This document shows, in pieces, positions 5,801 through 61,626 of a stretch of 64,000 nucleotides of DNA (position 1 is the stretch's first letter; the number at the start of each line of letters is the position of its first letter). The stretch lies in NCBI RefSeq assembly GCF_037042905.1, contig NC_087257.1:24056001-24120000 (forward strand). Reading direction: 5' to 3'. This DNA comes from Lytechinus pictus. Lineage: Eukaryota. A model generated the notes under the pieces. The model saw only the letters and a list, made by a program, of their open reading frames with translations. It was not told the DNA's origin and did no database searches. The translations under genes were made by a program, and so were the position numbers.

Positions 5801-8800
5801 CTGCCCCCCCCCCCCCCCCCCCCCCCCCCCGTAGGTACGCTAGTGGTTAGAACTAAAAAAAAACACTGCATAATAAACATGATTGAAGCTGCAAGAATTG
5901 AATAAATGGATAACAATCTTTTACTTTAAAATCATTTTAAGGTGAATAATCATCCCAAGGTATTATCATCAATGTTTACACACACCTACAAGGGACATTA
6001 GTTTGACATTCTTTGTACATGCTAGTAACCGTGTGGGAAGAGAGTTATCAACAGTGTGCTGCACCCAACCCAGGTGAGGTGCATAGGTTCCCGGCAGGAT
6101 TAATTCTTTGAATGAACATGGTGCTGGAAACAACAGCTGGAACAAAAGCCAGGGTAATATATAGAGCGCCACTGAATAGGCAACTAAACAACTGGTGCCC
6201 CATAAATGATATTATACAAATATACCGGGTTTGAAAAAGTATAGTGGAAATATTTTATCCGAGGTTGGTTTGGCAATTACTTCCTCTATATTTTCAAAAG
6301 AAACGCCCGGTATATTTGTTTTATATCCCTTCCATATTAAATTTTGAATTAAAAATATTGGTAATCTAATCCTTATTGACCAATCTCCATGATCTGGACA
6401 AAATGCAGATCAGCTTAGCTCTTATTTATGAAATATTGGCTAGCCGGTTCAGTGAATAGACTGCGCGCGGCTACCCCCGGCTCCCAAGCATCACTCAGGG
6501 TGGTTTGGCTTTACTGTGATCGATCTTCTAATAATTCCACTTGCCGGTTGTAAAGGTTGTGAACTAACCCTGCTGACCTAAAATCAAGCAGCCCAAATCT
6601 TTTGATGATTGAATGATGGTCATCATTAATTTTATTTTCAGCATACAGATTCATTATACACAAGCAAGTCGCAATTTCACATTGACATTTAGTTATCAGC
6701 GAGTTTTTGATTCAGCTAGCATAATGCATTATTACCTGTGCTGATTGCGCTGCGCTCAGGGGACCCATGATAAAGCATCCGTGATGTCCCATCACTAGAC
6801 TTGCCCAGTGGAGGCAGCACATCGTGCCCTGTGCCCGAGTGATTGTGTGGTTTTCAGTCAGACACAAAATAGTAAAAAAAAACTATTCTACTCTGACATC
6901 ACGATGTATTTTGATTTCTGATGAATTTCATTTTTCTGGTGATATTATGATTAGACACGTTAAAAGACCCTCGGCCGATTAAAAAGCAACAAATTTTCAG
7001 TATTAAGGGATATAAATATTATTATCAATAAAGAGGTAATGTTTGGTAGCAAGCCCTGATCTAGTATGGACTTATTATATTTGAAACCTGCCTTATCCTT
7101 GATTGATCTCGGGTCTTCTACCTGATATAAGAAATTCATAACATAAATCAAATATTGGGACTAAGCCCGAGTCATATCGATTATTTTGAAAACCGGTGTT
7201 CGACAGCTTTAATTCGATCGAACATCGATGCATCGAATGTTGAAGGTGGAGAAAATCGAGTCAATTTTATTTTGCTCCGGCCGTCGCGTCGATGCGCTAT
7301 GCACACACTGCACTAGCACCAACGACGGAGCAAAGTTCGTTTGTATTTTCCATGATCACAAAACACAAAAAAAGCCAGGGAACAAAGCAGAATTCTTCCC
7401 AAAATATCTTCAACAATGATATTTGCAGATGACAACAGTTAAGTTTAAAATGAAACAATATTAAAGACATGAATCACGCAGAGTCGATCCGAATGATTTT
7501 CGGTCAACTAGCATTCGCAGTCCAGACTCGCACACACCAAGCCATCCCGTCCGCAGCCCCGTACCGTACACTCACTCTCCCGAAACGACAGGCGTGCTTG
7601 CCAGCCAGCAAACAAGTGCACCCAGCGGAGAGCACTGTAACTTGCCTGAGATCGTGTAGTTGGATCCAAAATGAGCTCCAAATTGATGAGAATAAATATA
7701 ATAAGTAATTTTCTCTGGATGGTCATTTGAATTGGTATTTAATGCTGATATAACGATTGTGAGGAAAGATTGTGGAATATGAGTTATGACGATGTTCGAG
7801 AATTAATCCTGATATGATAATCCTTTTTTTTATTGTAGACACAAGAGCATGTGATCGAAATAAATACGAATGTCTCGGATCGAGCTCTGAATTCATATAA
7901 ATTATTATTGGATGTTAAATAATTACGATTTAATAAGATTTTATGGCCATACTAAAAAATATTGACGATGTTAGCAAAGTATGTTTATGTTCATATGGAA
8001 GTATTAAAACTCATTATTTTTATTTTTATTCAATCAAGACATCTCCGCAAAAAGAAGCACAATGCGCGTTCAATGACGTATGACATATTTTCCATTCATG
8101 AAATCAGAGCCCAAAGTTGGGCACAAAGAAGCTTCAAATTGATGGAAAAAAAATATCAAACGCAATTTTCTCTGTTTTGTCATGTAAAATGTTATTATAT
8201 GGTGATATTACGATATTGAAAAGGGTTTCTGCATGTTGACAATGTTCGAGAATCAATCCTGACGTGATAATTTTTTTTTAGACAAGTAGACAAGTGCACT
8301 CACTCTTGAAAGTCGATCGTCATGTGATGTCCGTCATTGAAAATTGAAACGAAATACAAACGTTTCATATTCACGCTCTAAATGCATATTAATGATTATC
8401 TTATGCAAATTATTGTTAAAAATTACATTAAATATTATTCTATGGTCATTACAATATTGTTCATGAATGCAAGGTATATTTTATGTTGATCGCGTCAATT
8501 TCCCGGCAATTTTCTGGTTTGATTAAAGCACAGTACTGCGCATGCACGATCGATGGCGATGACTTTCATTTTGGGGAATATAAATCAAGTAAGTAGTAGT
8601 CAAGTTGGACATTACTGTTTATTTTGATGAATGTGTGAACCAAACGAATCGGCCGGTTGACCATTTTTTTTCTTCGATGCACCGATTTTGCAAAATCTGC
8701 ACCGGTGCTAGATGACATAGATCATCGATTCGACTCAGGCTTAAAGGTAAATGCTAGCTTTGGTAACGATATCAAAATGAGTTCGTACAGAATCCAATGA

Positions 8801-24668: not shown

Positions 24669-25809
24669 TGTTAAGACCGTGTCAGCATATACCACGTTGT
24701 CACAATAACCACAAAGGAGGCGTATTCTAAAATTAGCTTCCTTTTAATACTTGGAAGTATCTCAGTAGCGGTGCTAGCTTGTAGCATATATTCAACAACT
24801 GTGTGTGAATCCTGTAGCAAATAACAAAAATTAAACAACAAAGATTTAGACTCTTGATTAAGTACTAATGGTTCCTTTCACATAGTATTACAATGGGTTA
24901 ATAACTTGGAAATGATATCAATACCTCTTTCACTTGTCAACTGTAACGTGTTATTATTCATTACACTTTTATGTAAACACTTGTGCTTATCTATATCATT
25001 AAAACATAAGCTTCTTATTCACTGAAATGTGTTTGAAATGTCATTTGTTTTGTTTCTAAAAATTACATAAACATCTATTATTATTTATGATCAAACTGCA
25101 CAATTCAGTTTCTTTTGCAAAGTGTTTAGCAAAGTATTGTAATATTTGTCAAAAAACGACTTAATCGAAACTAGCTTAAAGCCGAATCACCAAAGAAACA
25201 TCAGAAAATATTCCTCCGCTTTGAAAACGTGCGCGGAAAATATCCGTACAATTGGGTTTCAAAGTGATTAGCGTAAGAAAAATAGGTCTCATATCTCACC
25301 TCAAATGTATGAGTTATTGAACCAAATTAAACAAAATACGTGTTTTCAAATAATTGACAAACTATCATAAAACATGTTTGTTTCTCTCATTTGCCTTGAA
25401 TTACATTAACAACAAATTTTCATGAATTAAACTTTCACTCGGTACGCTGTCATGTTGAACACGTTTGTATTAACGTTAGTTATGTAATTTTCCATTATCC
25501 ATTTTTAAAGACAGGTCTAAATTTGACCCTAATCACCTTAAATACATTACAGAAATATATGTAGGAATTAAGCATAAACTACACTGTAATATTAATCGAA
25601 CAGAATTTAACGTACCTTCAGTTTTGTATTAAAAAACGAAGAAAACTCGGGATCGACCAAGGTCGATGTACCTTCGAACGGTCTTGTTTTAGCTGTGACC
25701 TTGCTTTGACCTTGAAGGGTAATTAGTCTAAACTCAAGTACATGCAAAAAACCAAACATTTCAAAAGGCAACAATATCTGAATATCAAAAACTATGTCAT
25801 TCTATGACA
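24669..25809 (-). repeat. 3' LTR of element A (1141 bp)
   Basis: Direct repeat of 31319-32128 plus 39638-39968 (810+331=1141); no differences seen by eye. Confidence 0.96.
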
Positions 25810-25899
25810 TCCCAACCCCCTAAGCGTGACGGAATGTCACAAATACAACAATCAATTCTTGCGTTAAAACTTTGATAAAAAAGGTTCATTAAAATATAA

Positions 25900-26055: not shown

Positions 26056-29000
26056 CTAAATGTCTGAACGTTCCTCTCGCTTCATCAGAGATACAAGTTT
26101 AGTGATGGGTCTGTTTGCACATGTGCCGTCTGCAAACTTCACTTCAACAATTCTTACCAGTCCATCTTGTCCAGGTTTGGTGTCTACTACTTCGGCCATC
26201 TTCCAAGACCCACGTCTTTTGTCATCACCGATGACAAGGACAATATCGTTCTTCTCTATGTTCTCTGCAGAATGTTGCCACTTCTGACGTGGCGTCAACT
26301 TGTGGATGTAGCCAAGCCATCTATGCCAAAACCCGTCCACCATTTTATTGCAAAGTTCTCTACGTTTGCGTGGATCTCCTTTGTAGTCTTCACAAGGGAT
26401 GTCTGGACAGGTCAATTCCCCTCTACCAATAAGAAAATGATTGGGGGTAATTGGAGGATGGTCCATGGGTGAGGAAGACATCGCAGTCAGGGGGCGGCTA
26501 TTGATGAGACCTGAGATCCTGCAGAAGATGGTCTCCCATTCCACAAAGGTTAGACGATCCGCCTTCACAAGATGCCGCATAGCTTTCTTTACTTCCTGGA
26601 CCATGCGCTCAACCGCTCCTTGGTGGTGAGGTCCTCCTGGTGGTCCGAACTTCCACTCGATTTTGAAACGTTGACAGTGCTCACGGACCTGTGTTTGGTT
26701 GAGTTTAAGATTCAGTTCATTGATTGTATTGTCAGCCCCTCGGAAACAAGTGGCATTGTCACTAACCATCATGGCAGGTGCTCCTCTAACACTGACAAAC
26801 CTTTCCAAGGCTTGAAGGAAAGCCTGAGTTGAGAGGTCCTGGACAACAGTCAAGTGGACAGCCCTGGTAACTGCACATGTGAATAAAGCACAGTATCCTT
26901 TGGTCGTGGTATTACGATTCAGTTTCACCATTACTGGGCCTAGATAGTCTACCAAGGTGGTCTTGAAGGGTGGAGAACAAGGGCTGATCCGGAACTCTGG
27001 TAAATCGGCCATTCTCTGGTGTGCCGGTCTTCCTCTATATCGTCTGCAAGGGATGCAACAACGAACAACACGTCGTGCGATGTTCATGTCGCCTACTATC
27101 CAATACCTCTTCCTGACCTCATTCGCAGTCCGCAAATGACCACCATGAAGGGCATGTAGATGTCTATCACGTACAAGGAGGAAGCTAATGTGGCTATTCT
27201 TTGGCAGAAGATAAGGATGGCGAACATCATACGACAAAGGGGCCCTACCAAGACGTCCGCCAACACGATACACCTGTTGGTCCTCATCAAAGAATGGACT
27301 GAGTTTCTGTATATTGGGATCTTGGAAATCTATCCCTTTCTGTGCTTGCCTGACCCAATATAGCTCTGCTTCCTTGATCATTCTTTGGGATGGCCATTCA
27401 GAGATCTGCCGGATGAGTTGCTTCAGCCATTGATTCCGTGGAAGCTCCTTGAGGGATAACACCCTGGCCGTGACCATCTGGAGTCTAGACCAACTAGAGA
27501 ATTTGGTTGCATCAACAATTGGATAATTCTTGGACACAGCATTCACAGATAATGCGAAAGTTTTGCTGTTTCGGGAGTGAAATTTCTTCCGTTCAGGATC
27601 TCCTGGTTTGACGGGAATGTTTTCAGGTGTCTTCGGCCATGATTGAGGAGGTAATCTCAAGAATCCTGGTCCATCAATGACCTCCTGCATGTCTGTGACA
27701 TCGCCTCCTCTAGAAATGAGATCAGCTGCATTTTCATCTGTGGGAACGTAGGCGATATCACTGTAGGGGTCAAATTCAGAAGTGATCTCACCAACTCGAT
27801 GGGCAACATATGAGCGGAAGGTTTTCGATTGCCCTCTTAGCCAACTTATCACCGTCATGCTGTCTGTCCATATCTTCCATCCTTCTATGTTGAGGCGTAG
27901 AGCACTTCGGATGGTGTACATCAATCTGGATAGAAGGAGAAGAGCTTGTAACTCCTTCCGAGGCATACTTGTTTGCTTTAGTGGCGTCACCCTAGACCTG
28001 GCACAGACAAAGGATAAATGAGCTTGTTGACTGTCAGTATGGGACCATCTCAGCCAAACTGCGAAACCCATAGCGTCCTCCGATGCATCGCTAAAACCAT
28101 GCATATATGCTGTAGGTAGAGGTCTCTTTCCCCTGTAAGGCTCCGGTATCAGACATCTTGGAATCTCAATGCCATCCATTTTGTCAAGGTCTCTGTTAAT
28201 CTTACTCATCATGGCATACAATTCACTGCTTTTGTCAATAGGGGAGTCCCAGTCAAGGTCTATTTGCCATAACATTTGAAGAAGAATCTTGGGGCGTACC
28301 AACAGACCAGAAAGCATTCCAAAAACATCGTAATAGGATGCCGTTTGAGCAAGAATCTTCCGTTTGGTCAGGGTAGTATCGTCAGAGGGTTTGACCTTCT
28401 TCACGCTCAGTGTATCCTTAGATAGATCCCAACTGGTTCCAAGAACTGTAGCAGTTTCAGTGTTTTCTGTCTCGTCACATACCTTTTTCACATTAGATTG
28501 CCACTTCCTTATGTTGAAGTTTCCCTTCTTCAGCGTGTCCGTCAATTTAGACTTCAGCTCCAGAGCTTCCTCAGTGGTCCTGACTGACTCATTCAGGTCG
28601 TCCATATAGAATTGCTCTGTGATTACTTTCTGTAGTTTGTCATCATCCGGTGCATGTTCACTAGCCACATGTCTGAGAGTGACTATTGCTGCAGTAGGGG
28701 AGGGCTTGTCCCCAAATGTAACGGTTCTCAGTTCATAGACTTGCATTGGGTGATTTGGATTTTCTCTAAACACAAATCTGTGGAATCTAGCATCATCTGG
28801 GGGAATCTTGATCGCCTGGAACATCTTTGAAATGTCAGCGATCACGCCCACTTCATTTTCACGGAACCGGAGGGCTACCTCAAACAGATTTGAGTTGACG
28901 TTCTCTCCTTTGATAAGATAATCATTCAGGGAATGTCCTTGAAATTTCGCCTTACCGTCATATACAACACGGACTGGAGTGGTTTTTGAGTCTTTGACAA

Positions 29001-31281
29001 CTGCGAAGTGTGGAAGGAACCACATCTTGTTCCCTGTTTCCCTGTCTTGTTGCAACTCATCCTGCGTCACTAGCCGAGAGACACCCCTTTCCAGTTGATC
29101 CTTCATTTGCCGACAGTAGACCTCCCACTCCTTTGGGCGATTTCTGAACTGGTTCTCAAGGCTCTTCTGTCTCTTTACAGCGTACTCATAGTTATCTGGT
29201 AACCCTTCTGGAGATCGCTTCCAGGGTAAGCGGATCTCATAAGAACCATCTGGTAGTTGATTGACACTCTTCATCATGGATTCAGTAGCTCCTTTCTCAT
29301 CATCAGAAATGCACTTGCATTTCCTGGGTTCCAAGCCAGCCGTCTCGAGTCCAATGAACTCCTCTAGGGATCCTGAAGCGACCACGTTAACGTAGTTAAG
29401 AAGTGGTGCTGTGTTAGATGGACCTCCTTGAATAAACCAACCTAGGGGACATCTTACCGCAACTGGTTCATCGGGTCTGCCTCCTCTGATATATTCCTCC
29501 CAGACCATAAGGTGAGTATTGTCCACTCCAAGTAATAGATCAATTACTGGTGATGAGGCTTCATCAATATTTACACCTGTCAAGTGGTCATATGATTCCA
29601 GCTGCTGAGGAGTAATGACAGGTATATCTCCACAGGGTTTCTCGATCTCAATGGCTCTCAAGGGGTATGAACAATTTCCTTGGCTATCCTCGATTTCACA
29701 TTCCAGGATCCTCAGCTTGCGTTTGATAATGCTTCCACCTACAAGGCTCAGGTCATGGTCCTGGTAACAGTCGCCATCAATTCTGGGAAAGATTCCTGTT
29801 CTTACGAGGGTGGCCTGACTACCCCCATCTATCAGGATGCGTACAGGGTGTCGTTTGTTACCACATCGCAGAAAACCCATCACAGTTGGTAAGGTAGCCT
29901 GCAGTTTCCCTAGTTCTGTGCTTGTAGAAGATTGAACTGAGCTGTTGGAATGCATGGGTCTCACAATGTCTTCTTGATTAGCACTGACTCTTCGACTCTG
30001 ATCTCTGGCATCATCATGGGCTTTGGTACAAATGGCGGGAAAGTGCTCATCACTACCACACATCTGGACTCGACATGGTGACCTGAACTGGCACTTACTG
30101 TGGTCATAAGGTGGCTTGCCTGAGATACAGTTATTATGGCCACACCTGAAGCAGATGTTGTTAGACTTCATCACGTCAAATTTCTCCTTTAGCGCAAGGG
30201 ACCTGAATTTATTGCATGTTTTCAGATAATGAGATGAGGTCTTTGGGTGCAGAGGGCACTTTGGGATGTGTGCAGTTGATGTATCCTCCCTCAACATGGC
30301 TGCGTTGAAGGACTTTGAAACTCTCTTTGTAGGTTCCAAGCTTTCAGATGTAGTAGATTTTGATTTCTCAATTAGGATGTGCTGTTGATATAGCCATTTG
30401 CTGAGTCCTGAGAGGGAATCATCAGTATTGTCATCGCGAACACTTTTGTAATACAGAATCCTATGTTCCTCTGGGAGCTTCAACTTGATTTGGCTCAGCA
30501 TAATCCTGCTATTCATCTCACCTGCTAAACCAATCGTCTCTGCTTGGCATTCAAAATTCTGAAGAACCTGGATGAAGTTTGCCATTGCAGGAAGATTAAC
30601 CTTTCCTTTACTCTCATATGGCTTGAGACTATCCAAATCCTGTAGCAGTCTGTCAACTACTCGGTCTTTGTCATCAAAGCGTTGGTCTAGCATCTCCCAT
30701 GCTCTTGCTACACTCGAACAGCTTTTGACCAAGTTTCTTTCCTTCTGAGACATCATTGATTCTGACAACTGGAAGAAACATTCAATCTCCGACAGTTCCT
30801 TCGTACAATGTTGGAACATTTCCTTGAATCTCTGATATTCCCTGATATCTCCATTGAATGTTGGGAATTTAAGTCTCGCCATCCTGGGAGCACAGGCACC
30901 TGCAGATTGATTCCGAGAGGTAGGAGCAGGAGAGCTTGGAGGAGTAGTTGACTGTTGATTGGATGCTTGGTTGATTGATGATGGCGACAGCTGTTTGCTG
31001 AGGATTTTCCTACCATCATTAATCTTCTGGACAAAGTCTGCCTCACAGTTGACCATCCAGGTTTCCTGTGCTTCAAATTCAACGTCGTTCTCTATTACCT
31101 GTACAAGCTCTGCGTGCGTCTCTTCTACCCTTGCGAACTGTTCCTCGGCCTTGTCGATGTACTGCTTGAGGAGACTAGTATCTGCAGAGTCATTGGAGAG
31201 GTTGACAATAGCTGTTAATGTCCTCGTCAATTGTCCCTTCAGATTGCGCCTCGAAACCTTTAGAGCCTTTGTGTCAGCCAT
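26056..31281 (-). CDS. BEL/Pao Gag-Pol polyprotein (1741 aa)
   Basis: FPTFNGD gag motif, three Cys/His knuckles, aspartic protease ILIDGGS, RT ADISKMF...FYMDD, Pao RNase H HGFSDASE/PRKEL/WTDS, integrase HHCC + VDYLGP/SDNAT/VERMV; no stops. Confidence 0.97.
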   Translation of the reverse strand: MADTKALKVSRRNLKGQLTRTLTAIVNLSNDSADTSLLKQYIDKAEEQFARVEETHAELVQVIENDVEFEAQETWMVNCEADFVQKINDGRKILSKQLSPSSINQASNQQSTTPPSSPAPTSRNQSAGACAPRMARLKFPTFNGDIREYQRFKEMFQHCTKELSEIECFFQLSESMMSQKERNLVKSCSSVARAWEMLDQRFDDKDRVVDRLLQDLDSLKPYESKGKVNLPAMANFIQVLQNFECQAETIGLAGEMNSRIMLSQIKLKLPEEHRILYYKSVRDDNTDDSLSGLSKWLYQQHILIEKSKSTTSESLEPTKRVSKSFNAAMLREDTSTAHIPKCPLHPKTSSHYLKTCNKFRSLALKEKFDVMKSNNICFRCGHNNCISGKPPYDHSKCQFRSPCRVQMCGSDEHFPAICTKAHDDARDQSRRVSANQEDIVRPMHSNSSVQSSTSTELGKLQATLPTVMGFLRCGNKRHPVRILIDGGSQATLVRTGIFPRIDGDCYQDHDLSLVGGSIIKRKLRILECEIEDSQGNCSYPLRAIEIEKPCGDIPVITPQQLESYDHLTGVNIDEASSPVIDLLLGVDNTHLMVWEEYIRGGRPDEPVAVRCPLGWFIQGGPSNTAPLLNYVNVVASGSLEEFIGLETAGLEPRKCKCISDDEKGATESMMKSVNQLPDGSYEIRLPWKRSPEGLPDNYEYAVKRQKSLENQFRNRPKEWEVYCRQMKDQLERGVSRLVTQDELQQDRETGNKMWFLPHFAVVKDSKTTPVRVVYDGKAKFQGHSLNDYLIKGENVNSNLFEVALRFRENEVGVIADISKMFQAIKIPPDDARFHRFVFRENPNHPMQVYELRTVTFGDKPSPTAAIVTLRHVASEHAPDDDKLQKVITEQFYMDDLNESVRTTEEALELKSKLTDTLKKGNFNIRKWQSNVKKVCDETENTETATVLGTSWDLSKDTLSVKKVKPSDDTTLTKRKILAQTASYYDVFGMLSGLLVRPKILLQMLWQIDLDWDSPIDKSSELYAMMSKINRDLDKMDGIEIPRCLIPEPYRGKRPLPTAYMHGFSDASEDAMGFAVWLRWSHTDSQQAHLSFVCARSRVTPLKQTSMPRKELQALLLLSRLMYTIRSALRLNIEGWKIWTDSMTVISWLRGQSKTFRSYVAHRVGEITSEFDPYSDIAYVPTDENAADLISRGGDVTDMQEVIDGPGFLRLPPQSWPKTPENIPVKPGDPERKKFHSRNSKTFALSVNAVSKNYPIVDATKFSSWSRLQMVTARVLSLKELPRNQWLKQLIRQISEWPSQRMIKEAELYWVRQAQKGIDFQDPNIQKLSPFFDEDQQVYRVGGRLGRAPLSYDVRHPYLLPKNSHISFLLVRDRHLHALHGGHLRTANEVRKRYWIVGDMNIARRVVRCCIPCRRYRGRPAHQRMADLPEFRISPCSPPFKTTLVDYLGPVMVKLNRNTTTKGYCALFTCAVTRAVHLTVVQDLSTQAFLQALERFVSVRGAPAMMVSDNATCFRGADNTINELNLKLNQTQVREHCQRFKIEWKFGPPGGPHHQGAVERMVQEVKKAMRHLVKADRLTFVEWETIFCRISGLINSRPLTAMSSSPMDHPPITPNHFLIGRGELTCPDIPCEDYKGDPRKRRELCNKMVDGFWHRWLGYIHKLTPRQKWQHSAENIEKNDIVLVIGDDKRRGSWKMAEVVDTKPGQDGLVRIVEVKFADGTCANRPITKLVSLMKREERSDI

Positions 31282-31318
31282 CTTGCGTTGATAATATACA
31301 GCAAAGTTGTTGAAGAAC

Positions 31319-32128
31319 TGTTAAGACCGTGTCAGCATATACCACGTTGTCACAATAACCACAAAGGAGGCGTATTCTAAAATTAGCTTCCTTTTAATAC
31401 TTGGAAGTATCTCAGTAGCGGTGCTAGCTTGTAGCATATATTCAACAACTGTGTGTGAATCCTGTAGCAAATAACAAAAATTAAACAACAAAGATTTAGA
31501 CTCTTGATTAAGTACTAATGGTTCCTTTCACATAGTATTACAATGGGTTAATAACTTGGAAATGATATCAATACCTCTTTCACTTGTCAACTGTAACGTG
31601 TTATTATTCATTACACTTTTATGTAAACACTTGTGCTTATCTATATCATTAAAACATAAGCTTCTTATTCACTGAAATGTGTTTGAAATGTCATTTGTTT
31701 TGTTTCTAAAAATTACATAAACATCTATTATTATTTATGATCAAACTGCACAATTCAGTTTCTTTTGCAAAGTGTTTAGCAAAGTATTGTAATATTTGTC
31801 AAAAAACGACTTAATCGAAACTAGCTTAAAGCCGAATCACCAAAGAAACATCAGAAAATATTCCTCCGCTTTGAAAACGTGCGCGGAAAATATCCGTACA
31901 ATTGGGTTTCAAAGTGATTAGCGTAAGAAAAATAGGTCTCATATCTCACCTCAAATGTATGAGTTATTGAACCAAATTAAACAAAATACGTGTTTTCAAA
32001 TAATTGACAAACTATCATAAAACATGTTTGTTTCTCTCATTTGCCTTGAATTACATTAACAACAAATTTTCATGAATTAAACTTTCACTCGGTACGCTGT
32101 CATGTTGAACACGTTTGTATTAACGTTA
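31319..32128 (-). repeat. 5' LTR of A, ORF-proximal part
   Basis: Matches 24669-25478. Confidence 0.96.
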
Positions 32129-32650
32129 TGTTGTAAAAATGGAAGTTGTGGGTTACAGATGATGTGATGGCACGAGATACGATACAATACGATGGCGAGT
32201 GGTTATAAATGACAAGTACAACACTGACAAGGGTTATTACTCACTAATTACACGAATGGGTTACCGACGATACAAGACACGGACAACAACTAATACTCAC
32301 CTGACACTTGTACTAAGGATTCCACACGGTAGATAACTAACTCAGGTAACATTGACTTCTATGTAGCTAGGTTGCAGACCATGGCGCCGAGTGGGGAGCT
32401 ACTATGTCCTCACTCGATGGCGTCTCGGGGTCTTCTCTCTCTGGTGTCTAGTCTGGATCTAATCTCTTGCACCAGCTTGTGTACGTGCTGTGCAACGCAC
32501 GTACACACGTAGCATGCGAAGGAGCATATAAAGGCTCCTCCAATCAGGACGCTCCTCGCATGCACACAGCACACACACAGACTTAACATACATGAACATA
32601 GGTCAATACATAGACTAATACATATACAGGTACATGGCAAATTTACTACA
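32129..32650 (-). repeat. 3' LTR of B (522 bp)
   Basis: Direct repeat of 39093-39633 with clustered differences. Confidence 0.93.
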
Positions 32651-33655
32651 TTCCTCCCGGTTCCATCAGATTGCGACATATATGACAAATCCATGAATTG
32701 GCTATATTGTGCAATCTCAATAGATATAAACAGATATGAAGAACTCTGACAGAAGAATGTAATATATGCCTAGGCTATATGATTAAAACTGATTAAATAT
32801 ATGACATCAATAAAATACCTCAAATACACAAAAAGTGTGATCTGAGGATATGAACTATTCTTAACTTGTTCATTAAAAAGATTGCTGGTCCAGCAAAATG
32901 AAACATCTCATCACTTGAGACCAGCAAATATACACTTGGAGAAACAAGAACAAGTTAATGGTAAGTATTAATCTGGCCAGGCTGGCCCAGTCTTGTCTAT
33001 GTATTGATACAAAGGTTATCTTCTCATTTAGTGCAAGTCTGAATGACTGAAAGAAGATATGTTCATCCTTCAAAGTGCACTACTTGACAAAGATTCTTAA
33101 AGTTGACTCTTGGTCAGTGCTTTATATTAAATTGTATATTGTACTATTAAAATAATGACAATGGAATAAAGCCAATTTGGCTGGAGCTCTATTACCAATT
33201 AATATAGGCCTGTACAATGTGACCTTTACAAATATGATATATAATTGGTCATATGTTTGAGCTCTTAAAAACATATAAAAATGTAAGGATAATTCAACCA
33301 GATCTGGTGCAAATAGATATAACAGCCTGGACCTGACATACATACATAGTATTTTCTCTTGAGAAAAAAACTACTACTATTTCAACATCCTGTATGACAA
33401 TATTTCCAAGGTTGTTTATAAAGCCTTTGCAAACAAGGTAAAAGATCTTTGGTTGAAATATCTATATCTTTATGAAATATAAAATATATACAAATATGAT
33501 AAAAGAATTATCTATTGCATAACCAGTGTATGCAACTATTACTTCATATGTCACCTGAAGAGGTAAAAACTATTGAAAAATAAGAAGTGTGCCCTTACCT
33601 TCAGTGACTATAGAATTAATTATAATGCCTAACAGAAATTTCAATTGCAGGACTT

Positions 33656-35200
33656 TCAGCAACTGATCAAGGAGATATTACTCCATTCTTGGGGTGGTGG
33701 CCAGGGAGGAAGGAGCCAAGGACAAGATGTAAGAAATGGGTTGTTACCTAAACTACAAACATACCTCTGGTTCCACCACAAGAAAGAACTGAGGAATTCA
33801 AGGATAGAGAACTTAGGAGGGGTAATTCCCAAAAGTAATTGCACAAGATAACTTTGCCCATACTTGGCATCCTCAGTAGAGGCTCGACTGTCCTCTGACA
33901 CAGTTACAAGACTTGCATTATCTACACCTATATTATTTACAGTATCATCACTTACACATGTAGTATGTACAGTTACATCATCTACACATGTGGTATTTAC
34001 AGTTACTTCATCTACACTTAAGATATCTACATGTGTTATTGCTAAACGTTCTGGACAGTTCCTCTTAAAATGTCCAGATTTGTTGCATGCAAAACAAACA
34101 TCACGACAAGACACCTTGGATTCAGTGTCTTCTGTCGAAGGAGAACGTGTAGGCTCATTCAGCTCTTGAACAGCCGTGACCAATGCCTGGACTGTAGACT
34201 GTAAGGACTTCATCTGTGTCTCTAGAGATTGAAGGTTGTCGACCTTCTTCTCAATACTTGACAAACGGTCCTCCAGCTTGTCCAGACGAGAGGGCAGCTG
34301 AGCATTAGAAGCGCGCCCGGAAACACCCATACGGTTGATTCTGGGATCCTCCTCAACAGTATCGTACGGCATTTGTCTTGCATACTTCTGCTTACACTGA
34401 AACAACTGAACTCTGTAAATGGCTTCCTCAAGAGTCTGCGGATGTGAATTAAGAGCATATTGTCCCGCTTCATGGTCTAAGGAACCCTGGCAAAATTTAT
34501 AAATGATTTTCTTCCCAACAATCTCCTCAGGCTGTCCTTCAAATGCACGTGCGGCAAGAGATAAGACACAACGTGCCCAATCTATTTCAGATTCAGTTGT
34601 AGCCTGTTTTGACGAATTGAATATCAATTCGTCTTTAGGAGTCTCCTGGGAAACAAATCTTTGTTCAAACTTCTTGATCAAATTTGTATAGGTAATGCTT
34701 TGTTCGCGACCAAGAACTAATGCCAGAAATTCACTTGCACTTCCCTCTAAACAGTAGCAAAACTGATTGCGCTCTTGGGCTTGATCCCAACCATTTGTCT
34801 CAGAATACAGTTGGAATTTACATAAGAAAGACTGCCAACTCCCTCTGCCATCGAAGGTCAAGAACTTGGGCAACGAGGAAACCCGCGCACCAGAAGTACT
34901 CCCACAAGAATAAGAACTGTGGGCACCACAACCTCGATTGAAGGGGGGAGGCTTTGCACAATCATAACGGCATTTATTGGCACATTTAAGTACAAGATCT
35001 GCTAGATGGAAATCGGATATACCATATGCCTGTGAATAATCAAACGTAGTACCAAACTCAACTACAAAATTGTCAGGATAATCTAGCTTGTATAGATTCC
35101 TTGCCAGTAAACCCTCAGTTAAGTATCTGTTTCTCGTACGAAGGTGTAAAATGTCTTCAACTAATCTTTGTTTTGCTCTAGTGATATCACTTTGCAGCAT
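33656..35200 (-). CDS. Retrotransposon Gag-like protein (about 514 aa from the first ATG)
   Basis: Capsid-type motif LPKFLTFDGRGSWQSF...NGW...LEGSA, predicted coiled coil, CCHC knuckle CFACNKSGHFKRNC, 10-aa repeats, C-terminal PPWPPP. Confidence 0.88.
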   Translation of the reverse strand: MLQSDITRAKQRLVEDILHLRTRNRYLTEGLLARNLYKLDYPDNFVVEFGTTFDYSQAYGISDFHLADLVLKCANKCRYDCAKPPPFNRGCGAHSSYSCGSTSGARVSSLPKFLTFDGRGSWQSFLCKFQLYSETNGWDQAQERNQFCYCLEGSASEFLALVLGREQSITYTNLIKKFEQRFVSQETPKDELIFNSSKQATTESEIDWARCVLSLAARAFEGQPEEIVGKKIIYKFCQGSLDHEAGQYALNSHPQTLEEAIYRVQLFQCKQKYARQMPYDTVEEDPRINRMGVSGRASNAQLPSRLDKLEDRLSSIEKKVDNLQSLETQMKSLQSTVQALVTAVQELNEPTRSPSTEDTESKVSCRDVCFACNKSGHFKRNCPERLAITHVDILSVDEVTVNTTCVDDVTVHTTCVSDDTVNNIGVDNASLVTVSEDSRASTEDAKYGQSYLVQLLLGITPPKFSILEFLSSFLWWNQRYVCSLGNNPFLTSCPWLLPPWPPPQEWSNISLISC

Positions 35201-37646
35201 TATAAATTCCAAATAAATTCAGAAAAATATTATTGATGATCACTCTGGTGATTCAAAGGCATATTCTTAAACATATTATTAACTGTCATAAATCCAAATT
35301 CAATGATCTACAGTGTATTAAACTTAACAGAATAAAGCTTGCAGATCAGTGAAAGAACTAGGTTTGGTATACTTCTTCAATCTACCAAGGAAAGAGTGAA
35401 GTATTGCAATACTTGTACTGCTAAGAACAAGCGTCTGAATATTAATAATAAATCGTGTACACACTCCACTCCTGTAGCAATGGGTGTAATCAGTGAAAGT
35501 ATATTTACAAATTACAGTGCAGCTTCAAGTTTCAGAAACTACACTTGTAGAATAGAATGTATCAAACTTGTACTACTCTGAGTAATCGCAGAAGTGTCAA
35601 TAAGTTTTACTTACTCTACGACTATTAAAAGAACCTAACAAGGATTCAACTTATCGAAGCCTCAACGATTACAGGAGTAGCATTCAATAATAATTGTTTA
35701 TTCCTAATGAATGCAATATATAAATAAATGTCAAACACACATTTATCCTACATCCGATTTTCTTTATTTTGTCTTTTGAATGTGGATAAGCCACCAACCA
35801 AAAAAATGAAAGTGAATGGCAACGAGCCTAAAAATGACTACTATTTAGAAATCAACTGGCGCAAAATGACAGCAGTGAATTTTGTACTTCACTGATGAAT
35901 GTGATTCTTGAGCCTGAATAGATCGAAATTTGCAAATTTTCAGCGCAAGAATGATGCTCCAAAAATACAAGAGCAACTATATGAAAAAAAAATAATTTAA
36001 AAGAATGTTGATATCAATTATTCTGATATCAAAGATCAATAGTATCTGTACTTTTCACTTAACATCAGAATCAAGAGTTGATTGAATTAAAATAAGTATT
36101 TTCAAGAGCCTTATTAAAATTTAATTCAGTACTTCTTGTACCTTCAGTTGAGATCTAAAATATAGAAATTAAATTTACAAGAATTATTCCAAAGAAAAAT
36201 TCCCGATCTAACAATGCTTGTTAAAATTAATCAACTAGGAAAACCTGAATTTCAAACAGACAAAAAGACAATCCAGGATAACCTCCAAGAAAAATTTCCT
36301 ACAAAGAACTAAGGGCCTGAAATTAAATTCCAAGTCCTCGTTCAAACCAGTTGTACACCGAGTCAAAAGGCAAAGCAAACAATTGCACTTGTTGGCTCCA
36401 GGTATACACGGTCAGGAAATTACAAACACCTGAGAGATTAAACAAGATTATTGGCTGCAAAGACTCCTAAAAAATCCTAATAATGGAATTTGATATCAAA
36501 TTCAGACAAAAGGATTTTTCTAACCTGGACTAAATTAAGTATTTTAGGGTTAGAAATTGAACTTCCAAGACTTTTAGTAATCAGGACAACAGTGCTTAGC
36601 TTATTTACTAATCCACTAAGAAAATTAAACTTAAAGATCCAAAAAAGACTAGACCTCTTTATTTTTCTTAAGATCAAATAATCTGAAGCTCAGAAGATTA
36701 ATTAAATAAATTCTGTTAAGTTTCCAGTTCGAACTGTCTTTCTCAAATGCAAACTAGTGCTATAGCACAGACACTCACACGTCAGATAAAAGGCTGACGC
36801 TAATGACACCGGACGAAGAAGCTTGGAGTTGGCGTGATAAAATAGGTTAGATCTACGAACAAGAAATACAATATAGAAACAAGGAATTTAGCCCAAAACG
36901 CGTAAATATTGAGTCAAGAGACAATTAGCAGCTAAATTCAGGAAATTGTCAGCAAAAACTGACGAAAAGAAAACTCGCGCTCGTTCAGAATTTGCCTTCA
37001 CGGCGACGATAGCCGGCTCGTGAACGTTATCCCTGCCTGGAGTTACGGACCAGACAGAGAGGTGCGTTGCGCTGGGGTTGGTTGGAAACCGCGCGACGTT
37101 AGATCTAAAATTAACTAATAAAGAATGATCCAATTACAAAATCAACTTCTACGAGTTCCTACTTAGAACTAATCTTCAAAATAAATCAACAGTCAAATAC
37201 GATAATCGTATAAAATCAGAATTTTGCAAATTCTAACTCTGATCGACTGTTGTGTTTACGTCAACGAGAGTCTCGATCTCGATCAAGTGAAAAATATAAA
37301 AGTCACGTGATTCGGCTCGACAGTACAGTGATGACTCACTCAATTATTCGCCGATCGAGGGTAGATTGTCAATTTTTGGTCAAAAACAATCTATTACTTC
37401 TTGACTTCCAAATCAATGGCAATGAAAATCAGCACATAGAGTTACCAATAGTGATGATTCAATTAATTTCGAATCAAAACGACATAAAAACATGTAACAT
37501 GAAGAACATAGAGAATAATTTATCTAAGTTATCAAGAAATAAATAGCCTACCGGTTTCTCTGCAAAACTACACAATTTCGAAAAATTATGGAGCCTACAC
37601 CCAACCAGCCCAAACTACAAATTATTTGATAGGGAAGATAAAATTA

Positions 37647-37870
37647 TTCAGACTTCTCTTTCCCAGTCCCAACGGGTCTGACACTGGTATTGACAGAAGT
37701 CTATTCACAGAAATATTTCAGACGTCTATATTTTTTCCAGCCCCAACGGGTCTGACACTGGAATTATTATACAGAAGTCTATTTACACAAATAATTCAGA
37801 CGTCTATTTTTTCCAGTCCCAACGGGTCTGACACTGGAATTATTTATAGATGTCTATATATTCACACACA
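37647..37870. repeat. Three tandem units of about 70-78 bp in the leader of B
   Basis: Core CCAG(T/C)CCCAACGGGTCTGACACTGG occurs three times. Confidence 0.9.
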
Positions 37871-39092
37871 ATTCTACCGAGTGGGTGAACAATTAGCAAC
37901 AATGAGTAACAATAACTTTTAGATTGAATTTAAGACAATGACAATCACAGTTATTAAAGAGAAACAATCACAATATCAGATGGGATGAATGAAATGCTTT
38001 AAAGAAAATTCACAAGATGTGTATTGATTAAGAACAAAATTCAAGAGTATATTTTCAAGTTACAGGTAAGATCCGAAGCTCAGAAAACCCACCTATTTTC
38101 TAGTAACAGGTAAGATCTGAAATTCAGAAAAACCCACCTCTAACGTACCACCGACACAAGTGTAATTTCGAGCTGGGTAAAAATTTGAAGTAAATTCAGA
38201 CTATTACTCAACTCGGCAACCAGGAGTATTAGAACTGGCTGTAAAAAACACTTGCCAAATGTCGATAGAAAATATATACTGGAAAATAGAAATGTATGAA
38301 CAGCAACTCTACGCCCTCAAAATATTTGTGCACTGCTCGATATGCAAGAATATGAAATTCTAGGAAACTCTTACCAACTGGAATAATTACTGAGGATCGA
38401 AAGAGAATTTCAAGTTCAAATTAACTTTTCCAATGCAATAAATCCACCAAATACTCACACCCGACTTTTTTTTTTTTTTTTTTTTTTTTTTTGGAACGGT
38501 GTGGTGTGAACGTTCCGAATTCGGAAGAAATCTTAAAGACAATGGCGGACTAAAAATATCCAAGCCTAGATGCAGATTTCAAACAATTCACAAACAAAAG
38601 CAACGAGATGGTAAGTTACGCAAAAATATGCAAGGAACGAAATTCTTGATCGCGAGCCAAACAATAGAAGAGACTCGCGAAGAATGCGATAAGAAATGCA
38701 AGTGCAACTAAACAATGTAGGGCGTGTGCACAGAGAATACCACGTGCGTTGCAATGAAAATGCAACGTAGTGGACATGAAATAATTCCCTAGATATGGCA
38801 AATATATTTAAAAATCCACTTGTATCAAACAAGAAATGATATCATGTACGGAAAAATGATAAAACTAAAACAAGATGTGTGCGAGATGCATGCGAATCCA
38901 CGCAATCACGGCACGCAAATTTACAATTCTCGGTAGAGAGCGGAAAACTTCTCACTCACTCTCCGTTCGATACACACTTCTAAATCACTCACAAATGACT
39001 TTTATGAGCAAATATAAAGTATGAAGGGACATGAAAAGATGAAAATGAAAATGACAGGCGCACAGGACGATCCGAAAACTCGCAATCGCCAA

Positions 39093-39633
39093 TGTTGTAA
39101 AAATGTATATGTTGTGGTGATGTGTTAGCGATGGTGTGATGGCACGAGATACGATACAATACGATGGCGAGTGGTTATAAATGACAAGTACAACACTGAC
39201 AATGGTTACGACTCACGACATTCACAAATGGGTTAATTACCGACGGTACAAGACACGGACAACAACTAATACTCACCTGACACTTGTACTAAGGATTCCA
39301 CACGGTAGATAACTAACTCAGGTAACATTGACTTCTATGTAGCTAGGTTGCAGACCATGGCGCCGAGTGGGGAACAGCTGGGATGCGTGTCCACACTCGA
39401 TGGCGTCTCGGGGTCTTCTCTCTCTGGTGTCTAGTCTGGATCTAATCTCTTGCACCAGCTTGTGTACGTGCTGTGCAACGCACGTACACACGTAGCATGC
39501 GAAGGAGCATATAAAGGCTCCTCCAATCAGGACGCTCCTCGCATGCACACAGCACACACACAGACTTAACATACATGAACATAGGTCAATACATAGACTA
39601 ATACATATACAGGTACATGGCAAATTTACTACA
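39093..39633 (-). repeat. 5' LTR of B (541 bp)
   Basis: Direct repeat of 32129-32650; minus-strand ATTGG followed by TATA-like TTTATAT. Confidence 0.93.
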
Positions 39634-39637
39634 GTTA

Positions 39638-39968
39638 GTTATGTAATTTTCCATTATCCATTTTTAAAGACAGGTCTAAATTTGACCCTAATCACCTTAA
39701 ATACATTACAGAAATATATGTAGGAATTAAGCATAAACTACACTGTAATATTAATCGAACAGAATTTAACGTACCTTCAGTTTTGTATTAAAAAACGAAG
39801 AAAACTCGGGATCGACCAAGGTCGATGTACCTTCGAACGGTCTTGTTTTAGCTGTGACCTTGCTTTGACCTTGAAGGGTAATTAGTCTAAACTCAAGTAC
39901 ATGCAAAAAACCAAACATTTCAAAAGGCAACAATATCTGAATATCAAAAACTATGTCATTCTATGACA
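39638..39968 (-). repeat. 5' LTR of A, distal (U3) part
   Basis: Matches 25479-25809 and is followed by the GGAAA TSD. Confidence 0.96.
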
Positions 39969-60234: not shown

Positions 60235-61193
60235 CTTGCAGATAAAAGTTAACTTGTGCAGGTCTTACATCAACGTCTTAGCCTTCATATATGAACTTCT
60301 GCACTTTAATATGACAAAGTCTTAGAATCTTGAGTATTCCTGAGGATCATGTACTTGAGATTGTTGCAACTCAGCTAACCTTGTACTACTTGCAGCATCA
60401 TGATCTGTGGTATTCCTTCTTGACTTGTATCATGAACTTCTCTATTGATTTTCCAAAGTTTATTCAAGCCCGAGTTTCAGATCCACTGTTAACTCTCTAG
60501 TGTGTTTTAATTTTCTCCTTCTACTTTATTCTATTCCTGTTGTTGTGTAGGCTGATTGTTAATTAGTCCTGGCCTCATTAGATCTCTGTCTTAATCTCGG
60601 ACATCTAGCTCAGAGATCTACCTCAAAATTGATCTGTTTTTCCAGCACCTTACAACTACGAATTACGGCCCTGGCCTTCATTTTATTCAGATCTTTTCCA
60701 AGACTAAAAACATCCTTTTCACTGCCTTGTTCATCTTCAGGAATGTGCTTCTCATTTTGATTACTTCATTTCACTAGGATGCTCAACTTCATCTACGTTC
60801 CCGTTTATAATATAAAATCTAGCTTAGATTCCATATTGAAACTCTAGGGTTGACTGCATTCATCTCATTAGCAAAACCAGTTTTATTTCACCACCATGTC
60901 ATGACTGGTAATTTTCATTTCCTTTTGTCTCAACTTTGTTCATCTAGTCTAATTCAAGTCTCAAGAAGCAGGCTATGCACGTATTCCAATACAGAACGAA
61001 ATAGTCTATGTTCTATACGCTTCCCTTTATAGTTATAGCGTCATCAATCACGATTGTTTACTCACATACGGTACTCAGCTAGTGTCCTTCTTAACTGGGT
61101 GAAGAATCCTCCATCCTTGTTTGATTACTGAGCTCAGAACAAATCCATGTTTACTACAGTCCAATGTTGAAGCGAGACCGATTTTTCAACTGA

Positions 61194-61626
61194 TGTAGGT
61201 GCACTTTAATCCCGGACTTTTATGCTTCGTATTAGACACTTTCACACGCTTCCGTTCGTACCCTCCTCCGTTGTCCCAATCCTTTTGCGATCATCAAATC
61301 ATCATCACAAACGTCCCGTGGCACAACAAACATCAAAACTTCAAAGATGAAACCTCACTAAGTAAATTTAGTTCGATGGTCTATAATTCTAGTCATTCTG
61401 CAGGGTTCCGTTACACATTCATCGATCCAAAAATACACAGAATCAATCAATTAAAGTATTGAAAGGGAATCAAATTCGGAAGGTTGAAAAATCGTATGCC
61501 TTCGCCGGGTCCCATATTGTACACGTTTTCTATAACAAAATACTGCCCCAGCCCCTCGATCGTCAATTTTAAGCCTTTACCAAGTTTGAACAAGAGATGG
61601 CGCTATTTCACTTCTTGGCAGTAACA
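61194..61626 (-). repeat. 5' LTR of C
   Basis: Direct repeat of 51675-52107. Confidence 0.97.

What the first reader, a model, noticed from the sequence alone, without database searches (positions are those of the whole stretch)
31305..31450. The same PBS-LTR self-complementarity occurs independently in BEL/Pao element A
Seen: after A's 5' LTR the sense strand reads ...TAACA|GTTC TTCAACAACT, again with no TGG. The 10-mer at 31305-31314 is the perfect reverse complement of 31441-31450 in the LTR (sense AGTTGTTGAA). That site sits in an initiator-like context (ACAGTT) about 50 nt upstream of an ATTAAA signal, which would give a conventional short R region starting at this A. A and C have unrelated LTR and PBS sequences, yet both show the pairing, which resembles family-level covariation. 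Inference: a shared self-priming or PBS-sequestering structure in this BEL lineage. A rough chance estimate for A alone is about 5e-3, weaker than for C, and there is a 4-nt gap to the LTR end.
Basis: partly seen in the sequence, partly recalled or inferred. Interest (0 to 1): 0.78.

Follow-up and report, generated by a model that had tools for sequence, protein, structure and literature searches.

The report
Self-priming site in BEL/Pao retrotransposon
A young sea-urchin BEL/Pao retrotransposon has, where a tRNA primer site should be, ten bases that pair with its own LTR, and relatives keep this pairing through matched changes on both sides, so the lineage probably starts reverse transcription with its own RNA, which is not what this family is described as doing.

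Summary
TTCAACAACT (31314->31305, minus strand) lies 4 nt after the 5' LTR end and is the exact complement of AGTTGTTGAA (31450->31441), 52 nt upstream of ATTAAA. Element A is an intact BEL/Pao element of Lytechinus pictus with identical 1141-nt LTRs and TSD TTTCC. Its 5' LTR is split by nested element B.

For A alone the match is only moderately unlikely (p about 0.003 to 0.04). The strong evidence comes from relatives:
- The LTR site lies in the only block alignable with a sister family.
- Eight relatives from other echinoderms and metagenomes keep both 10-mers.
- Five relatives changed both sides together. On the 13-row alignment the helix is 99% paired and 5 of 10 pairs show double changes.

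This favours Tf1-like self-priming over a host tRNA.

A transcription start at 31450 is not shown. A's LTR contains a GT-AG intron, precisely absent from sister copies, that ends 11 nt upstream of the site. In the sister clade the primer complement exists only across such a splice junction, and one copy preserves a primer-cDNA junction.

This scan had already reported the same idea on other DNA: element C in this window and other BEL/Pao copies in this genome.

The parts
31305..31314 (-). Primer-binding position of element A: TTCAACAACT, exact complement of the LTR site
   Evidence: Invariant in 8 relatives, and changed together with the LTR site in 5 others.
31315..31318 (-). 4-nt spacer GTTC between LTR end (..ACA) and the PBS. 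Relatives have 2-3 nt, always ending in C.
31441..31450 (-). Candidate self-primer AGTTGTTGAA in the 5' LTR, preceded by CACAC
   Evidence: It lies in the only block alignable between the A and A74 LTRs.
24791..24800 (-). The same 10-mer in the 3' LTR
31393..31398 (-). ATTAAA polyadenylation signal 52 nt downstream of the site (3' LTR copy at 24743-24748)
   Evidence: An A(A/T)TAAA lies 9-80 nt after the site in the relatives examined.
31342..31356 (-). U5 box ATTGTGACAACGTGG: a second, partial complement of the site followed by GTG. It reads ATTGCAACAACGTG in most relatives and changes with the primer in L048 and L050.
31319..32128 (-). Distal part of A's 5' LTR. 32125-32128 is the TAAC target duplication of nested element B.
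39634..39968 (-). Proximal part of A's 5' LTR (starts TGTCATAG)
   Evidence: The two parts joined are 1141 nt and 100% identical to the 3' LTR.
24669..25809 (-). A's 3' LTR, 1141 nt, TGTCATAG...TTAACA, preceded by the purine-rich tract TTAGGGGGTTGGGA (25810-25823)
24812..25615 (-). 804-nt GT-AG intron inside the LTR (CTGAAG|GTACGT ... TTGCTACAG|GATTC), shown here in the 3' LTR. The 5' LTR copy runs 39774->31462 and contains element B.
   Evidence: It is precisely absent from both LTRs of three sister copies and from two diverged LTRs.
26056..31281 (-). Single Gag-Pol ORF, 1741 aa: DUF1759, RVT_1, Peptidase_A17 (Pao), Integrase_H2C2, DUF5641
32129..39633 (-). Nested LTR element B (TGTAGT...CAACA, TSD TAAC) inserted in the intron part of A's 5' LTR. 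Not part of the priming feature.
61483..61494 (-). Comparator: element C LTR 12-mer CGATTTTTCAAC, which pairs with 61179-61190 located 3 nt after C's 5' LTR

Best explanation
Element A and its clade of BEL/Pao retrotransposons most likely prime minus-strand DNA synthesis with their own RNA, as Tf1 does, and not with a host tRNA. In this model the RNA segment AGUUGUUGAA, copied from the LTR about 130 nt upstream, folds back onto the ten bases that sit 2-4 nt after the LTR. The element's RNase H then cuts at the end of this duplex, where a conserved C.U mismatch closes the helix. The freed 3' end is extended through the spacer and U5. What is shown: the pairing, its conservation, its co-variation, the absence of a TGG-type site, and the recent activity of the family. 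What is inferred: the cleavage, the use of the segment as primer, and where the RNA starts. The segment need not be the first bases of the transcript, because A's LTR holds a spliceable intron ending 11 nt upstream of it.
For: (1) The pair is exact and correctly placed: 10 nt, starting 4 nt after an LTR end fixed by the TSD. This meets the published operational criterion for predicting self-primers, at least 10 bp starting 0-5 bp after the 5' LTR (PMC6317226). (2) The LTRs of A and of sister family A74 (74% RT identity) align by blastn only over one 28-nt block, and that block contains the site. (3) L041-L046, which include copies from Diadema antillarum and Holothuria leucospilota, keep acacAGTTGTTGAAt 88-174 nt before the LTR end where that end is fixed independently, and keep TTCAACAACT 2-3 nt after it. 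(4) Both sides change together in five relatives: L049 TGTTGTTGAA/TTCAACAACA; L048 GATTGAAAAA/TTTTTCAATC; L047 GATTGGAAAA/TTTTCCAATC; L050 a 13-mer ACAAATTGAATAA/TTATTCAATTTGT with LTR ends fixed by a TSD; L040 9 of 10. (5) count of structure pairs gives 99.2% of cells paired, 5 of 10 pairs changed on both sides, and a covariation score of 0.279 against 0.100 in shuffles (0 of 500 reach it). Slid controls pair 17-60%. (6) All of these elements sit in one RT clade with 100/99 support. (7) The family is active: six near-identical copies, and A's LTRs are 100% identical. (8) The minimum-energy and centroid folds of the site-to-PBS RNA both close with this helix. (9) In sister clade F a copy (L037) carries exon 1, the junction primer, and then the reverse complement of spacer plus U5, matching 76/77 and 101/103 nt. 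This is what a primer still joined to its first cDNA would leave behind.
Against: There are no RNA data, so the 5' end of the transcript, the cleavage and the primer itself are unobserved. The A-lineage pair is invariant in most relatives, which also fits a conserved trans-acting partner or a promoter constraint. For L047 and L048 the LTR end was placed by homology (ACA + 2-3 nt + PBS), not by an LTR pair, so those two rows are partly circular. A's 4-nt spacer is longer than in all relatives. The overall fold energy of the R-U5 stretch is not better than shuffles (z = -0.7). No primer-cDNA fossil of the A type exists in the genome. The tRNA set of the host was not scanned.
Confidence: 0.7

Rival explanations
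1. The pairing is real and selected but is not the primer. It would sequester the PBS, circularise or dimerise the genomic RNA, or mark it for packaging, while an unidentified RNA primes synthesis.
For: Covariation proves pairing, not priming. A second complement of the same LTR segment lies in U5 (the U5 box), and L047 has another in its leader, which suggests alternative conformers. If transcription starts upstream of the LTR intron, the segment is not at the RNA's 5' end.
Against: Nothing else in A's 37-nt leader looks like a primer site: there is no TGG, and the ATG follows directly. The paired bases sit exactly where a PBS must be, 2-4 nt after the LTR, in every relative. The L037 fossil in the sister clade shows DNA synthesis starting from the 3' end of the paired segment.
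Confidence: 0.15
2. A host RNA primes synthesis, such as an internal tRNA fragment as in copia, and the similarity of the LTR site to that RNA is incidental or serves another purpose.
For: TTCAACAACT is invariant across urchins and a sea cucumber, as expected for a conserved host primer. The ICTV profile describes Belpaoviridae as primed by tRNA-Arg or tRNA-Gly (PMC8742986). Half-tRNA priming is known in Ty1/copia (PMC6317226).
Against: There is no TGG. The PBS differs in L047, L048, L049, L050 and L040, and each time the element's own LTR changed to match. A host RNA would not track each element in this way. ARAGORN finds no tRNA gene in the window.
Confidence: 0.06
3. The match is a chance 10-mer.
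For: For A alone p is only 0.003-0.04.
Against: The same pair recurs at the same place in 8 relatives whose LTRs have diverged, and other pairs occupy that place in 5 more.
Confidence: 0.01

Closest known systems
Tf1/Tf2 of Schizosaccharomyces pombe and the Tf1/sushi group (Ty3/gypsy), including Tj1
   Same: There is no tRNA PBS. The bases just after the 5' LTR are complementary to an upstream segment of the element's own LTR-derived RNA. The mechanism is described as self-annealing followed by RNase H cleavage (PMC4600332; PMC5341516).
   Different: A belongs to a different superfamily (BEL/Pao, Pfam Peptidase_A17). The duplex is 10 nt, against 11 in Tf1. In Tf1 the primer is the first bases of the mRNA, which is not shown here and may not hold because an LTR intron ends 11 nt upstream. 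A U5 repeat of the PBS-like sequence is present in the position where Tf1 has its described U5-IR structure.
[quoted passage not shown]
   Same: They are recognised by the same signature: an LTR segment of at least 10 bp complementary to the region 0-5 bp after the 5' LTR (PMC6317226).
   Different: They are plant elements of the other two superfamilies. The passages I read for them do not mention an LTR intron or co-variation data.
Canonical Belpaoviridae priming (tRNA-Arg or tRNA-Gly 3' end, 18-nt PBS)
   Same: Same element architecture: LTRs, one Gag-Pol ORF, a purine-rich tract before the 3' LTR (one search compared).
   Different: A has no TGG-type PBS, and its PBS position pairs with its own LTR.
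Intron-split self-primer reported by this scan for other L. pictus BEL/Pao families, re-found here in clade F
   Same: Clade F is the sister clade. The PBS sits at the same place, has the same TTCAA core, and its LTR partner lies next to a splice acceptor.
   Different: In F the complement exists only across the exon-exon junction. In A it is contiguous, 11 nt downstream of the acceptor.

Membership tests
BEL/Pao (Belpaoviridae) LTR retrotransposon | Pol with Pao-type aspartic peptidase (Peptidase_A17), RT and integrase, flanked by LTRs and a target-site duplication | tested here: met
   Pfam: PF05380 at 3e-38, plus RVT_1, Integrase_H2C2, DUF1759 and DUF5641. 1141-nt TGT...ACA LTRs and TSD TTTCC.
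BEL/Pao (Belpaoviridae) LTR retrotransposon | 18-nt PBS complementary to the 3' end of tRNA-Arg or tRNA-Gly (ICTV profile) | tested here: not met
   There is no TGG in the 37-nt leader. The ICTV statement is from PMC8742986. A full tRNA set was not scanned.
Self-primed LTR retroelements (Tf1 type) | An LTR segment of at least 10 nt complementary to bases starting 0-5 nt after the 5' LTR | tested here: met
   10 nt, offset 4. The criterion is from PMC6317226.
Self-primed LTR retroelements (Tf1 type) | The pairing is maintained in relatives by changes on both sides | tested here: met
   5 of 10 pairs have double changes and 99.2% of cells are paired. L049 and L050 add further cases.
Self-primed LTR retroelements (Tf1 type) | The complementary segment is the first bases of the mRNA | not testable with these tools
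   No RNA data were available. The CACAG context resembles an initiator and a T/A-rich stretch lies about 20-35 nt upstream, but an LTR intron ending 11 nt upstream leaves an upstream start possible.
Self-primed LTR retroelements (Tf1 type) | RNase H cleavage of the RNA duplex releases the primer, and cDNA is joined to element RNA | not testable with these tools
   Indirect evidence only, and only for the sister clade: the L037 fossil. No such fossil exists for A.
Self-primed LTR retroelements (Tf1 type) | An additional U5 structure near the PBS (U5-IR-like) | tested here: inconclusive
   A conserved U5 box complementary to the primer segment was found, but it is a direct repeat of the PBS, not a U5 hairpin. 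Fold z-scores are not significant.
Tf1/sushi group (Ty3/gypsy chromoviruses) | Ty3/gypsy-type Pol | tested here: not met
   Pfam assigns the Pao peptidase family. Best relatives are BEL/Pao proteins.

The most novel reading that the evidence does not exclude
Several deep branches of echinoderm BEL/Pao elements (the A clade, the F clade and C) all prime reverse transcription from their own RNA, and the primer segment is tied to an intron inside the LTR. In F it spans the exon junction. In A it lies 11 nt past the acceptor. Splicing of the LTR would then decide whether a transcript can prime and whether its progeny carry long or short LTRs. This would be a splicing-gated form of self-priming that I did not find described for any retroelement.
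Probability: 0.35. Interest if true: 0.85.

Novelty: new variant of a known kind. Interest (0 to 1): 0.72.

Why it matters
Self-primed reverse transcription is established experimentally only for Tf1/Tf2 (Ty3/gypsy). It has been predicted for a few Ty3/gypsy and Ty1/copia lineages. The third superfamily, BEL/Pao, is described in its taxonomy profile as tRNA-primed. A co-varying self-primer in an active echinoderm BEL/Pao clade would show that this priming mode occurs in all three superfamilies. It would also explain why tRNA-based PBS finders fail on these elements. Together with the LTR intron, it gives a concrete system in which RNA processing and the start of reverse transcription can be studied together.

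Tried and rejected
I replaced it with an ungapped helix score and a decoy test.
- I first read the F-clade pairing as 6+3 bp with a bulge, then as 9 bp with a G.U pair. I dropped both once the splice-junction reading gave perfect 10-12-mers next to GTRAGT donors.
- No primer-cDNA fossil of the A type exists in the genome. The pattern matches only the six normal copies.
- ARAGORN finds no tRNA gene in the window. The host tRNA set was not scanned.
- Whole-stretch fold energies are not better than shuffles.
- The BEL/Pao survey paper holds no PBS data, and no paper in the searchable library links BEL/Pao with self-priming.
- The alignment tool prints a consensus line. I did not use or keep it.

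Full report
**Observation.** On the minus strand the 5' LTR of element A ends ...TTAACA at 31319. It is followed by GTTC and then TTCAACAACT (31314->31305). The exact complement AGTTGTTGAA lies at 31450->31441, and again at 24800->24791 in the 3' LTR. ATTAAA follows 52 nt later, at 31398->31393. The 37-nt leader has no TGG before the ATG at 31281. Element C's 12-mer pair is also real.

**Anatomy.** A is an intact BEL/Pao element. It has one 1741-aa ORF (31281->26056) with DUF1759, RVT_1, Peptidase_A17, Integrase_H2C2 and DUF5641.
- Its LTR is 1141 nt (TGTCATAG...TTAACA), longer than a first look suggests.
- The 5' LTR is split at LTR position 335 by nested element B (39633->32129, TSD TAAC).
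- With B and one TAAC removed, the two LTRs are 100% identical.
- The element is flanked by the TSD TTTCC, which fixes the LTR end and hence the 4-nt spacer.
- The genome is Lytechinus pictus.

**Chance.** Against decoy 18-mers from A's own coding region and the last 300 nt of the LTR, a complement of 10 nt or more arises in 10 of 3472 cases. Over the whole LTR with wobble-tolerant scoring the figure is 0.04. A alone is therefore suggestive only.

**Copies and the sister family.** The genome holds six near-identical full copies, all with the same pair. Diverged solo or 3' LTRs (75-95% identity) keep the block around the site almost unchanged. A sister family, A74 (74% RT identity), has LTRs that blastn aligns with A's only over one 28-nt block, and that block contains the site. 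A74's leader reads TC|TTCAACAACT.

**Relatives elsewhere.** A protein search and contig look-ups gave elements from S. purpuratus, Diadema antillarum, Holothuria leucospilota and several metagenome assemblies.
- Six of them (L041-L046), like A74, keep acacAGTTGTTGAAt. Where the LTR end is fixed independently, the site starts 88-174 nt before it. All six keep TTCAACAACT 2-3 nt after the LTR.
- Five others changed both sides together:
  - L049: TGTTGTTGAA with TTCAACAACA.
  - L048: GATTGAAAAA with TTTTTCAATC.
  - L047: GATTGGAAAA with TTTTCCAATC.
  - L050: a 13-mer, ACAAATTGAATAA with TTATTCAATTTGT, with LTR ends fixed by its own TSD.
  - L040: 9 of 10 pairs, with one pair swapped from A-T to G-C.
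- On an alignment of 13 site-to-PBS stretches the terminal helix is 99.2% paired. Five of ten pairs changed on both sides. The covariation score is 0.279 against 0.100 for shuffles (0 of 500 reach it). Slid registers pair only 17-60%.
- Caveat: for L047 and L048 the LTR end was placed by homology, not by an LTR pair.
- All of these elements form one RT clade (100/99 support). The variant-primer elements L047, L048 and L050 are nested within it. Clade F is its sister, and C is distant.

**A correction about the transcription start.** Three full sister copies of A, together with two diverged LTRs, have LTRs that lack positions 195-998 exactly. The missing stretch reads CTGAAG|GTACGT ... TTGCTACAG|GATTC, a GT-AG intron with a pyrimidine tract.
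- Donor-like AAG|GTATGT and acceptor-like Y-rich CAG|G motifs recur in A74, L042 and L043.
- The site lies 11 nt downstream of the acceptor.
- Intron-less progeny can arise in two ways: the intron lies in U3 and is spliced from the 3' end of the RNA, or it lies in R. The start at 31450 therefore remains possible but unproven.

**Sister clade F.** Four families (37-39% RT identity to A) carry ATTCAATTTCT-type sequences at the PBS position and have no contiguous LTR complement.
- Following a lead from earlier notes of this scan, I found in each LTR a donor (..AGAA|GTAAGT..GAAA|GTGAGT) and an acceptor (..CAG|ATTGAA). The spliced junction is a perfect 10-12-nt complement of the PBS, with matched differences between families.
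- One F4 copy, L037, contains LTR 1-249, then the junction, then the reverse complement of spacer plus U5. It matches a predicted primer-cDNA chimera at 76/77 and 101/103 nt.
- I read this as a fossil of a primer still joined to its first cDNA.

**Mechanism.** The best reading is Tf1-like self-priming. The LTR-derived RNA segment anneals to the PBS position, RNase H cuts at the duplex end, and synthesis starts through the spacer and U5. The pairing and its selection are shown. The cleavage and the priming are inferred.

Rivals:
- Pairing with a regulatory role and an unknown primer (0.15).
- A host tRNA fragment (0.06), disfavoured because the PBS and the LTR change together.
- Chance (0.01).

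**Comparison with what is known.**
- Self-priming is demonstrated for Tf1/Tf2. It is inferred for Tj1, the Tf1/sushi group, plant Tcn1 and the Ty1/copia TAR lineage.
- The ICTV profile states that Belpaoviridae are tRNA-primed.
- I found no paper in the searchable library that links BEL/Pao with self-priming.
- This scan had already reached the same idea for element C and for other BEL/Pao copies of this genome, so the present finding is a further, independently tested case.

**Limits.**
- There are no RNA data.
- The host tRNA set was not scanned.
- Relatives of C were not examined here.

Noticed in passing
window 24812-25615 (3' LTR); 31462-39774 in the 5' LTR: A's LTR contains an 804-nt GT-AG intron. 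Three otherwise near-identical full copies (L003/L014, L004/L011, L006/L010) have both LTRs with exactly this stretch removed, so the family has propagated from both spliced and unspliced RNA.
   Followed up: partly
L025, L028, L029, L031 (oriented LTR positions about 227-303 and the last 35-116 nt): In four sister-clade families the PBS complement exists only across an LTR exon-exon junction (..AGAA|GTAAGT donor, CAG|ATTGAAT acceptor). The exon-1 end and the PBS differ between families in matched fashion.
   Followed up: yes
L037 (G000:C8:26830190-26840180, read on the minus strand): oriented 2422-2498 and 8300-8402: An aberrant F4 copy carries LTR 1-249, then the spliced junction, then the reverse complement of spacer and U5. 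It matches a predicted primer-cDNA chimera at 76/77 and 101/103 nt and looks like a fossil of self-primed strong-stop synthesis.
   Followed up: partly
window 31342-31356 and the homologous U5 position in L020, L042-L046, L048, L050: A U5 box repeats most of the PBS sequence (ATTGCAACAACGTG; ATTTTTCAATGTGG in L048; TTTATTCAATTGTGG in L050) 28-46 nt before the PBS and changes along with the primer. It gives the primer segment a second possible partner.
   Followed up: partly
window 32129-39633: Nested element B must have inserted after A, whose LTRs are 100% identical. Yet B's own LTRs are only about 93.5% identical. B has a TGG-type site (TTGGCGATTGCG) after its 5' LTR and sits inside the intron part of A's LTR.
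   Followed up: no
L047 about 6294-6304: This relative has a second 11-nt complement of its LTR primer segment in the leader, about 120 nt downstream of the PBS.
   Followed up: no
all A-clade elements, the base just 5' of the PBS: The last spacer base is C in every A-clade member. It faces a U (an A in L050) after the primer segment, so the helix always ends in a mismatch at the presumed cleavage and extension point.
   Followed up: no
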